A stretch of DNA of 64,000 bases, from contig QPMI01000212.1 in assembly GCA_004431415.1 (NCBI GenBank), forward strand, positions 81,678 through 145,677, written 5' to 3'. Position 1 is the first letter of the stretch, and the number at the start of each line of letters is the position of its first letter. This DNA is from Cyanophora paradoxa CCMP329. Taxonomy: Eukaryota > Plantae > Glaucophyta. Position numbers and translations under genes: made by a program. This document shows, in pieces, positions 24,230-26,140 of the stretch. The notes below the pieces were generated by a model that was not told where the DNA came from, made no database searches, and worked only from the letters and a program-made list of their open reading frames with translations.

Positions 24230-24546
24230 GCGGCGGCTGCGGCGCCAGGCTCAACTTCGATCAGCCCGTGTTTAATCCGACTACTAGCTATGTAGTAGTA
24301 GCCGACATGCAGGAACTGGGATTTCGACGGCACTGCGCATGCGGCAGCGTTGAAGCGGGGATAGCTATATGAGCTGCTGATCATAAGCTTTGGCTACAGG
24401 ATCCGATGATCCGGAGCTAGGACGTCGACGTCGGTTGCGAATCGAAAGGGCAAGTCACCAGCTGCAGTGGCCAGCTGCATCAACCAAGTCCCGAATCCGC
24501 GTAGCCCCCCCGTCTTCATTCCCCCGTTCGCCAGACAGATCTAGCC

Positions 24547-25519
24547 ATGGCCTTCGTCGCCGCCACCCCGTTCGTGTCTGCCCGCGCCACCAGCATTCAG
24601 GCGACCCCGGCCTGCTCCACCGTCGCGACCCGGCCGGTCCTGCGCTCTGCGTTCAAGGGTGCCGCCGTCGCGCACCGCACTTTCGCTGCCCAGCAGGTTC
24701 AGGTTAGTCGCGCCAAGTCCCCCTGCCGAACCTTGTGATCTGCGCGCGACTCGTGCCTGACCACCCGCGCGCTCGCAGTTCCAGCCCCGCACCTTCACCG
24801 TGCGCGCGGAGCTCGACAAGAACATCGGCGCTGCCATCAGCAACGCGCTGACTTCCATCTCCGGGGTGAGAACGCCCCGCCGAAAAGAATCTGAGGAGGG
24901 GCCATCGGACCGCGCGCTCTATGTGACACTTAAGGCTAACATCCGCATAGAAGGAGATGGAGTTCACTCCTGAGGCGGAGCAGCTCAACGGCCGGTGCGC
25001 GCTCGATGCGACCTAATGATGTGGGTCCGCCCGCTGACGTCTATCTCGCGATGCTCGCAGCCTGGCGATGCTCGGCATGCTCGGGTTCGCTTTTAACTAT
25101 CTAATTCGTTTGCTTGGTCTGACCATGCTCGGGATTGGCACAGTCTCATCCTGATCGAGGTCCGCTGAGCGCTAGCGACGGTTCGCGCTCGCCGCCGCCG
25201 ACGCGCTCATCGCAGCTCGCCACCGGCGCTGGCGGTCTCAAGTTCCTCTACGGCACTTTCCTCGCCCCCGGTCCGTGCCACTCTGGCCCGGCAGCGCCCC
25301 GTTGCTGACAGGAGGCCCGCGGCGCAGTGCTCGAGCTCATCGGCTTCGGCTTCTTCGTGTGGTTCGTTTCCAAGAAGGTGCTCGTCAAGTCCGCGCGCGA
25401 GGAGCTCATCGGCGGTGAGCGTCGCCTTCCCCGCCCCGCCGGCGCCGCCGCTGGTGCTGAGCGCGCCGCCCGCAGAGGTCACGGGTCTGGTCGACAAGAT
25501 TGTCGGCAAGTCCGAGTAA
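24547..25519 (+). CDS. Plastid two-helix protein: HLIP/LHC chlorophyll-binding helix fused to CURT1/CAAD-like C-terminus
   Basis: 8 exons (24547-24702, 24779-24865, 24951-24994, 25061-25084, 25144-25159, 25216-25270, 25328-25414, 25476-25519), all GT-AG; MAFV transit peptide; FTPEAEQLNGRLAMLGMLGLILIELATG then FLAPVLELIGFGFFVWFVSKKVLVKSAREELIGEVTGLVDKIVGKSE*. Confidence 0.85.
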
Positions 25520-25705
25520 GAGCGGGGGTCGCCCGTTTCTCTAGGACCCACAGGCAGCCGTATGCAGTCATAGATAGATGCACTCTTTTCAAGCTTTCAA
25601 CAACGGCGCACTTCTGCGCCACTGCTCGCGATCGCGCGCCTGCCCCGAGCACTTTTCTGAACGCCGGCGCCGGCTCGCGCCGTCGGCCGAGGCCCGGCCA
25701 GCCGG

Positions 25706-26140
25706 CTAGGGGCGGCGGGGGGCTCCCCAGAGCGCGGCGGGCGGGGCGGCGGAGGCGGGGGCGGTGCCGGCGACGGCGACGCCGGAGGCGAGGTGGGTGA
25801 GGTCGAGCGTGGCGAGGCGCCCGTTGCCCGGCGCCGGGCTCTCCGCGCTCGTCGCCACCGTCCGCTGCGTCCCGTTCTCCACCAGCACGTAGCGGTACCC
25901 CTCGTACGCTGGAGGGGCGTCAGCCCGGTCGGGCGAAGGTGGCCTACTCGAGCGCGGGGCGGCACGCACGGTTTTGCGCGGGGGTGCTGGGGTACGGGCT
26001 GGGCGCGGCGACGTGCCCGGGGGAGGGCGGGGCCGCGTAGCGCGCAAGGGCGGGGACCGCGTCGAGCGAGGGCGCCGGCGCGCGGCCGAAGAGGAGCGTC
26101 TCGAGGCTCGTGACGCGCCGCTCCAGGCTGGCAACCTGCC

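What the first reader, a model, noticed from the sequence alone, without database searches (positions are those of the whole stretch)
24547..25519. HLIP chlorophyll-binding helix grafted onto a CURT1/CAAD thylakoid-curvature module
Seen: eight clean GT-AG exons encode a MAFV transit peptide, then FTPEAEQLNGRLAMLGMLGLILIELATG, then FLAPVLELIGFGFFVWFVSKKVLVKSAREELIGEVTGLVDKIVGKSE. Known: the first block is the ExxNGRxAM chlorophyll-binding helix of HLIP/OHP/SEP proteins. The second closely follows the second TM and C-terminal amphipathic helix of CURT1/CurT/CAAD (P..ELxG.G..WF....L.KS.R.EL..I.G). Inference: TM1 of a curvature protein has been replaced by a pigment-binding photoprotective helix, or a SEP acquired its second helix from CAAD. 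This could deliver chlorophyll/carotenoid binding or quenching to curved thylakoid margins and biogenesis sites, and bears on how two-helix LHC-like proteins arose. I do not know of this fusion being described; it may be annotated only as a SEP.
Basis: partly seen in the sequence, partly recalled or inferred. Interest (0 to 1): 0.85.

Follow-up and report, generated by a model that had tools for sequence, protein, structure and literature searches.

The report
Glaucophyte chlorophyll-helix / CurT-half fusion protein
This is a real, expressed nuclear gene of the alga Cyanophora paradoxa whose small plastid protein joins a complete one-helix chlorophyll-binding unit to the back half of a thylakoid-shaping CurT/CURT1 protein; the protein was catalogued in 2010 as "stress-enhanced protein 1", but I found no paper noting where its second helix comes from.

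Summary
Eight GT-AG exons (24547-25519, + strand) give a 513-nt CDS of 170 aa. Transcript contigs from three separate studies join all eight exons, including a 16-nt micro-exon.

The spliced product is identical to database protein P0001. That is UniProt D9PTQ2, Cyanophora paradoxa "Stress-enhanced protein 1", from Engelken et al. 2010.

Pfam passes its curated cut-offs for both parts:
- Chloroa_b-bind covers residues 82-116.
- CAAD covers residues 124-167, but only profile positions 42-85 of 85.

Residues 81-121 are 56% identical to a glaucophyte one-helix protein, almost to its last residue. Residues 124-170 are 47% identical to the C-terminal half of a bacterial CurT-type protein. The first helix shows no CAAD similarity (8.7% identity).

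Proteins with both parts turned up only in glaucophytes: Cyanophora, Cyanoptyche, two Glaucocystis species and two unnamed transcriptomes. A profile search of 5.8 billion proteins dropped from 223 bits or more to 60 bits outside this set.

No searched paper links CAAD/CURT1 with LHC-like proteins or glaucophytes, although databases tag both domains automatically.

Function is inferred, not shown: a pigment-binding dimer whose CurT-derived half mediates oligomer contacts at thylakoids. It is a new variant of a known kind, and it identifies the source of a SEP second helix.

The parts
24503..24546 (+). 5' UTR (minimum extent)
   Evidence: RNA contig of run X3 starts at 24503
24547..24702 (+). 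Exon 1, residues 1-52: transit peptide with Phe at position 3
   Evidence: F3 is invariant in the five-sequence alignment. An N-terminal Phe in glaucophyte plastid transit peptides is known from the literature (my own knowledge).
24779..24865 (+). Exon 2, residues 53-81: end of the presequence and a short amphipathic helix (about 62-80)
   Evidence: Hydrophobic moment is 0.41. AF2 predicts a helix at 66-77, at low confidence.
24951..24994 (+). Exon 3, residues 82-96: start of the chlorophyll-binding motif (E91, N94, G95, R96)
   Evidence: These residues are invariant.
25061..25084 (+). Exon 4 (24 nt), residues 96-104 of the chlorophyll-binding helix
25144..25159 (+). Exon 5, a 16-nt micro-exon, residues 104-109 (includes invariant E109)
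   Evidence: RNA contigs carry these letters between 25084 and 25214 (table 5c)
25216..25270 (+). Exon 6, residues 110-128: end of the HLIP-type unit, the fusion junction (residues 122-123) and the start of the CAAD half (from residue 124, base 25258)
25328..25414 (+). Exon 7, residues 128-157: CAAD second TM helix and start of the C-terminal helix
   Evidence: Pfam CAAD on this exon alone, E=3.2e-7
25476..25519 (+). Exon 8, residues 157-170 plus TAA: end of the CAAD C-terminal helix
25520..25626 (+). 3' UTR (contigs of X3 and X7 end at 25625/25626; the X1 contig runs past 25700)
   Evidence: table 8

Best explanation
This is a nuclear gene of Cyanophora paradoxa for a plastid (muroplast) thylakoid protein with two membrane helices. 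The mature protein is a chimera. A complete HLIP/OHP-type one-helix chlorophyll-binding unit (residues about 82-121) is fused, at residues 122-123, to the C-terminal half of a CurT/CURT1 (CAAD) protein. That half comprises the second TM helix plus a C-terminal heptad-patterned helix (residues 124-170). The fusion arose in the glaucophyte lineage and has been kept under constraint in every sampled genus. It is the protein that Engelken et al. 2010 listed as glaucophyte 'SEP1'. Shown here: the gene structure, the transcript, both homologies, the junction and the taxonomic range. Inferred mechanism: the protein inserts with its N-terminus in the stroma, like HLIPs. This puts the CAAD helix and tail in the same orientation as in CurT/CURT1, with the C-terminus in the stroma. 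The chlorophyll-binding helix pairs with a second such helix, its own or that of a one-helix protein, through the Glu-Arg pairs typical of HLIP/LHC, and so holds chlorophyll and carotenoid. The conserved CAAD half then provides CurT-type helix-helix contacts, either self-association or docking onto canonical CurT oligomers. The result would be a pigment-holding, photoprotective unit tied to CurT-organised thylakoid regions. My confidence in the architecture and origin is about 0.95. My confidence in the CurT-contact mechanism is about 0.35.
For: All exon joints are confirmed by RNA contigs from three studies. The spliced model is identical to P0001/D9PTQ2. Pfam gives PF00504 at 26.8 bits (cut-off 22.3) on residues 82-116, and PF14159 at 41.1 bits (cut-off 30.7) on residues 124-167, profile positions 42-85 of 85. 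Residues 81-121 are 56% identical (23/41) to a Gloeochaete one-helix protein, up to 2 residues from its end. Residues 124-170 are 47% identical (22/47) to a CAAD protein on a bacterial contig carrying SLH, IS605 OrfB and Uma2 genes, up to 2 residues from its end. In the 44-column CAAD half, glaucophyte proteins average 36.8% identity to CurT/CURT1. In the first helix they average 8.7%, with a mean BLOSUM62 score of -0.15. G133, F140, R151, L154 and G167 are invariant across fusion proteins, bacterial CurT-type proteins and green CURT1. The chlorophyll-binding residues E91, N94, G95, R96, A98, M99 and E109 are invariant among the fusion proteins. Orthologs with both domains occur in Cyanoptyche, Glaucocystis nostochinearum, G. 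incrassata and two transcriptome contigs. There are two hydrophobic segments, at 93-118 and 119-147.
Against: There is no experimental or computed evidence for pigment binding, oligomerisation, localisation or any effect on membrane shape. The homodimer prediction gave no verdict. The monomer model is of low confidence, with pLDDT 52. Only half of the CAAD domain is present, and the N-terminal region of CURT1 is not recognisably kept. I could not check whether Cyanophora has a canonical CurT to dock onto. The CAAD half could serve merely as a second membrane anchor.
Confidence: 0.6

Rival explanations
1. It is an ordinary two-helix SEP. The CAAD-derived half is only a second membrane anchor that fixes topology. 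The protein would then work like plant SEP/LIL or OHP proteins, as a transient chlorophyll carrier in chlorophyll synthesis or photosystem assembly, with no link to CurT or membrane shape.
For: Only profile positions 42-85 of CAAD are present. SEPs in other lineages have a second helix without the LHC motif and without a Pfam CAAD tag (every non-glaucophyte hit is PF00504 only). Nothing here shows curvature activity.
Against: The extramembrane C-terminal helix, which an anchor does not need, is conserved with CurT/CURT1 down to R151, L154, V158 and G167. That argues for retained CurT-type contacts.
Confidence: 0.33
2. It is functionally a CurT/CURT1-type membrane-shaping protein. Its first helix merely resembles a chlorophyll-binding helix and binds no pigment.
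For: In P0002 and P0003 the CAAD alignment stretches over both helices, at profile positions 14-85 and 9-85. The two-TM topology equals that of CAAD.
Against: The first helix passes the PF00504 cut-off in all family members. It is 56% identical to a one-helix LHC-like protein over 41 residues. All pigment-ligand motif residues are invariant. The first helix adds nothing to the CAAD score and is 8.7% identical to CAAD first helices.
Confidence: 0.05
3. The gene model is an artefact: two neighbouring genes, or chance open frames in GC-rich DNA, wrongly joined.
For: The window is 60-83% GC and has long chance open frames. For example, one frame is open from 25309 to beyond 25788. Three exons are only 16-44 nt long.
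Against: Single RNA contigs of 947 and 663 nt from different studies span all eight exons with no mismatch. The same 170-aa product was derived independently from ESTs in 2010. Intronless transcript contigs of orthologs carry the same two-part protein.
Confidence: 0.02

Closest known systems
Two-helix stress-enhanced proteins (SEP/LIL; glaucophyte SEP entries of Engelken et al. 2010)
   Same: It has one LHC-type chlorophyll-binding helix followed by a second TM helix without the motif, and it is nuclear-encoded and plastid-targeted. This very protein is deposited as C. paradoxa SEP1.
   Different: Its second helix and tail are recognisably CAAD/CurT. No non-glaucophyte hit in the profile search carries PF14159. 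The 2010 paper defined SEPs by the motif plus two TM helices, built its tree on 32 positions, and left SEP monophyly open.
CurT / CURT1 (CAAD domain, PF14159) thylakoid curvature proteins
   Same: The second TM helix and C-terminal helix are homologous: 47% identity to a bacterial CurT-type protein, with five residues invariant across the groups. The inferred topology of this half is also the same.
   Different: The CAAD first helix and the N-terminal region are absent and replaced by an HLIP-type unit. Curvature activity is unknown.
HLIP / OHP1-like one-helix proteins
   Same: The whole unit, from the residues before the ExxNGRxAM motif through the glycine-rich end, is kept. It is 56% identical to a Gloeochaete one-helix protein.
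   Different: One-helix proteins stop where this protein continues into the CAAD half.
Other natural fusions of these modules: ferrochelatase II with a C-terminal CAB/HLIP helix, and cyanobacterial aminoacyl-tRNA synthetases with an appended CAAD
   Same: They show that each module is portable and is used to tie a function to thylakoid membranes. The Atlas structure search lists both kinds next to this protein, as a lead only.
   Different: Those fusions attach a whole module to an enzyme. Here the two membrane modules are spliced to each other, and only half of CAAD is used.

Membership tests
LHC-like superfamily, two-helix SEP subfamily | LHC chlorophyll-binding motif (ExxNGRxAM) in a TM helix | tested here: met
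   PF00504 scores 26.8 bits against a cut-off of 22.3 on residues 82-116. E91, N94, G95, R96, A98 and M99 are invariant in the family.
LHC-like superfamily, two-helix SEP subfamily | Two TM helices, with the motif in the first | tested here: met
   Hydropathy peaks lie at 93-118 and 119-147. AF2 predicts helices at 88-112 and 116-166, at low confidence.
LHC-like superfamily, two-helix SEP subfamily | Binds chlorophyll and carotenoid | not testable with these tools
   This needs reconstitution or purification of the native protein.
LHC-like superfamily, two-helix SEP subfamily | Second helix shares ancestry with that of green and red SEPs (monophyly) | tested here: inconclusive
   No non-glaucophyte hit has PF14159. 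I did not compare plant or red-algal SEP second helices directly.
CAAD / CurT / CURT1 (PF14159) | Significant match to the family profile | tested here: met
   The match is 41.1 bits against a cut-off of 30.7. Exon 7 alone gives 30.5 bits.
CAAD / CurT / CURT1 (PF14159) | Complete domain with both CAAD TM helices | tested here: not met
   Only profile positions 42-85 of 85 are matched. The first helix is 8.7% identical to CAAD first helices, with mean BLOSUM62 of -0.15.
CAAD / CurT / CURT1 (PF14159) | N-terminal amphipathic helix before the first TM helix | tested here: inconclusive
   Residues 62-80 have a hydrophobic moment of 0.41, but the region is poorly conserved among orthologs.
CAAD / CurT / CURT1 (PF14159) | Oligomerises and bends thylakoid membranes | not testable with these tools
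   The homodimer prediction gave no verdict.
HLIP / OHP one-helix proteins | A single TM helix | tested here: not met
   The protein has two hydrophobic segments.

The most novel reading that the evidence does not exclude
Glaucophyte 'SEP1' shows in a traceable case how a one-helix chlorophyll protein became a two-helix one: by capturing the back half of CurT. Functionally, it would co-assemble with canonical CurT through the shared TM2 and C-terminal helix, placing an HLIP-type pigment-binding, quenching unit at curved thylakoid edges or biogenesis zones. This would also make the SEP group polyphyletic, which weakens the argument that SEPs in all three primary plastid lineages descend from one ancestral two-helix protein.
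Probability: 0.3. Interest if true: 0.75.

Novelty: new variant of a known kind. Interest (0 to 1): 0.55.

Why it matters
Current accounts of antenna evolution say that two-helix SEPs arose when an OHP-like protein gained a second helix of unknown source, and that SEPs then gave rise to LHC and PSBS. For the glaucophyte SEP1 entries the source can be named: the C-terminal half of CurT. The junction can be placed to within two residues.

This makes the open question of SEP monophyly testable, by asking whether green and red SEP second helices carry any CAAD signal. It also weakens the use of glaucophyte SEPs as evidence for one ancestral SEP.

It offers a concrete, testable physical link between two systems studied separately: HLIP/OHP-type chlorophyll handling and CurT-organised thylakoid architecture. 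The organism has unstacked, cyanobacterium-like thylakoids.

The gain is modest. The protein itself is catalogued, databases tag both domains, and no function is shown.

Tried and rejected
- **Exon-by-exon Pfam scans.** Exons 1, 2 and 3, by reference, gave no hit. They are a transit peptide or too short.
- **First Pfam call.** It failed because of a frame slip of mine and was corrected.
- **Word-indexed search with P0001 residues 60-170.** It found only P0001 itself.
- **Homodimer prediction.** Residues 62-170, two copies, scored 0.00. The tool's verdict is 'no answer', which is no evidence either way.
- **AlphaFold2 with the five-sequence alignment.** It gave pLDDT 52 and pTM 0.21. That is too poor for a fold search, so I ran none.
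- **ESM Atlas search.** The best score was 0.75, with TM-scores of 0.34-0.57. I treat these as leads only. They split the protein into a CAAD-like back half and an HLIP/ferrochelatase-CAB-like front half, and no cluster carries both families.
- **Literature searches.** CAAD + LHC-like gave 0 papers. CAAD + glaucophyte gave 0. 'CAAD domain' + light-harvesting gave 1, an unrelated wheat proteome paper. CURT1 + Cyanophora or glaucophyt gave 1 and 5 papers. I read the passages of one of these, where CURT1 is mentioned only for its patchy distribution. I saw only the titles and abstract openings of the others, and none mention this protein.
- **Rejected: exon shuffling at the junction.** The junction (residues 122-123) lies inside exon 6, not at an intron.
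- **Rejected: a green-algal source.** The organism is Cyanophora.
- **Not done.** I ran no search with a typed joined protein. I could not test whether Cyanophora has a canonical CurT, and I made no direct comparison with plant or red-algal SEP second helices.

Full report
**How the searches were handled**

I never typed the joined protein or sent it to any search tool. I built it only inside a script from window.fa, to check phase and translation.

An exon-7-based search then returned database protein P0001. A script showed P0001 to be identical to the model over all 170 residues. All later whole-protein work used the id P0001.

**1. The observation**

The window is very GC-rich, 60-83% per 2 kb. 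From the ATG at 24547, eight exons with GT..AG introns give a 513-nt in-frame CDS ending in TAA at 25519. The exons are:
- 24547-24702
- 24779-24865
- 24951-24994
- 25061-25084
- 25144-25159
- 25216-25270
- 25328-25414
- 25476-25519

Sixteen runs guessed to be RNA hold 15-33% of the stretch's sampled words, whereas three runs with no kind on record (one sample) hold 50-91%.

I laid four runs on 24300-25700. Single contigs of 947 nt (X1) and 663 nt (X3), plus the X7 contigs, come from three different studies. They lie on exactly these exons without a mismatch. The 16-nt micro-exon appears as the letters between 25084 and 25214. The run X17, which has no kind on record, is collinear with the genome, so I take it for DNA. 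The transcript is therefore real and is a single molecule.

**2. What it is**

Exon 7 alone (29 aa) matches Pfam CAAD (PF14159) at E=3.2e-7. I then used the chance-open frame that contains exon 7 as a length carrier and scored only its first 40 residues. This search returned one protein, P0001. It is UniProt D9PTQ2, 'Stress-enhanced protein 1', Cyanophora paradoxa, a third-party annotation entry. The window is therefore nuclear DNA of a glaucophyte.

On P0001, Pfam passes both curated cut-offs:
- Chloroa_b-bind: 26.8 bits against 22.3, residues 82-116.
- CAAD: 41.1 bits against 30.7, residues 124-167, covering only profile positions 42-85 of 85.

Hydropathy shows two membrane segments, at 93-118 and 119-147.

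**3. Where the two halves come from**

An exhaustive phmmer scan of 1.84 billion representatives gave 41 hits at E of 0.001 or better. Three kinds of hit matter here:
- Those that span both halves are other glaucophyte proteins.
- Hits to the back half alone are CurT/CURT1-type proteins. P0015, P0025 and P0033 start without a plastid-type presequence. P0023 is Tetraselmis CURT1.
- Hits to the front half alone are LHC-like proteins.

Residues 81-121 are 56% identical (23/41) to a one-helix protein of Gloeochaete wittrockiana. That alignment ends two residues before the Gloeochaete protein's C-terminus.

Residues 124-170 are 47% identical (22/47) to P0015, again ending two residues before its C-terminus. 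P0015 is a CAAD protein on a bacterial contig with SLH, IS605 OrfB and Uma2 genes.

In a joint alignment of 10 sequences:

| Segment | Glaucophyte vs CurT/CURT1 | Within group |
|---|---|---|
| CAAD half (44 columns) | 36.8% identity | 48.9% (glaucophytes), 53.9% (CAAD proteins) |
| First helix | 8.7% identity, mean BLOSUM62 -0.15 | 68.7% (glaucophytes), 23.0% (CAAD proteins) |

So the protein is a whole one-helix unit joined at residues 122-123 to the C-terminal half of CurT. The junction lies inside exon 6, so the present introns do not mark it.

**4. Range and conservation**

Proteins with both Pfam domains were found in these sources:
- Cyanophora paradoxa.
- Cyanoptyche gloeocystis. UniRef names this one only 'CAAD domain-containing protein'.
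- Glaucocystis nostochinearum, deposited as 'SEP1' (D9PTQ4).
- Glaucocystis incrassata.
- An MMETSP transcript, P0042. Its organism was not established.
- A Logan transcript contig, P0048, closest to Glaucocystis.

A profile of five members was searched against 5.8 billion proteins of 0.55-1.75 times the query length. It scored the family at 223 bits or more, and the next protein at 60 bits. Every non-family hit was tagged PF00504 only.

Within the family the pigment-ligand motif residues (E91, N94, G95, R96, A98, M99, E109) are invariant. So are the CAAD residues P127, L129, E130, G133, F134, F140, L146, R151, L154, V158 and G167. G133, F140, R151, L154 and G167 are also invariant across bacterial CurT-type proteins and green CURT1. 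Both halves are therefore under constraint.

F3 is invariant. This fits the N-terminal phenylalanine of glaucophyte plastid presequences, which I cite from my own knowledge of the literature.

**5. How it probably works (inference)**

HLIP/LHC first helices insert with the N-terminus on the stromal side. The following helix then returns to the stroma. That is the orientation of the second TM helix and tail in CURT1, whose two ends both face the stroma (established knowledge of both families). The graft therefore preserves topology.

A single chlorophyll-binding helix cannot form the crossed, Glu-Arg-locked helix pair that holds chlorophyll in HLIP, OHP and LHC proteins. A dimer is therefore expected, either a homodimer or a heterodimer with a one-helix protein.

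The extramembrane C-terminal helix shows a heptad-like hydrophobic pattern at L154, I155, V158, L161, V162, I165 and V166, read directly from the sequence. It shares invariant residues with CurT/CURT1. That is more than an anchor needs, so I favour retained CurT-type contacts: self-association or docking on CurT oligomers.

I put this mechanism at about 0.35. The plain 'SEP with a borrowed anchor' reading is at about 0.33. Nothing here shows pigment binding, oligomerisation, localisation or curvature. The dimer prediction gave no verdict, and the monomer model is poor.

**6. Comparison with what is known**

Engelken et al. 2010 (PMC3020630) found two SEPs in C. paradoxa. They named the glaucophyte lineages SEPx.1 and SEPx.2, and defined SEPs by one chlorophyll-binding motif plus two TM helices. 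Their tree rests on 32 positions. They left SEP monophyly explicitly open, while arguing from the presence of SEPs in all three lineages for an ancestral SEP. I did not establish which of the two lineages the 'SEP1' database entry corresponds to.

None of my full-text searches found a paper linking CAAD or CURT1 with LHC-like proteins or with this glaucophyte protein. That library lacks most subscription-journal papers. Automated domain annotation does show both families.

**Verdict**

The protein is already catalogued. The recognition that its second half is a CurT half-domain, the location of the junction and the glaucophyte-only range are new as far as I could search. I rate it a new variant of a known kind, of moderate interest.

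Noticed in passing
window 25144-25159: A 16-nt micro-exon, flanked by 24-nt and 55-nt exons, is spliced constitutively in contigs from three studies. The gene packs eight exons into 973 bp, with introns of 57-85 nt.
   Followed up: partly
window 25520-25700 and beyond: The transcript contigs of X3 and X7 end at 25625/25626. The X1 contig continues about 240 nt past 25700. This could be alternative 3' ends or an assembly difference.
   Followed up: no
window 25309-25788, + strand: One frame stays open for 160 or more codons through exon 7, intron 7, the 3' UTR and beyond. This is a by-product of the high GC content, not coding sequence, and a warning against ORF-based calls in this genome.
   Followed up: partly
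P0005-P0009: These proteins of 541-2078 aa have 4-8 separate matches to the chlorophyll-binding helix. They look like LHC polyproteins. I did not check their sources.
   Followed up: no
P0063, P0151/P0161 (Gloeochaete wittrockiana) and P0014 (Logan contig): These are nuclear one-helix LHC-like proteins with glaucophyte-type presequences (P0014's source organism was not checked). P0063 and P0151 stop almost exactly where the fusion protein continues into the CAAD half, so they are candidate relatives of the donor of the front half.
   Followed up: partly
L003:3434-4636 (bacterial contig carrying the CurT-type protein P0015): An IS605 OrfB / Cas12f-like TnpB gene lies near the CurT-type gene, alongside Uma2 and SLH-domain genes.
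   Followed up: no
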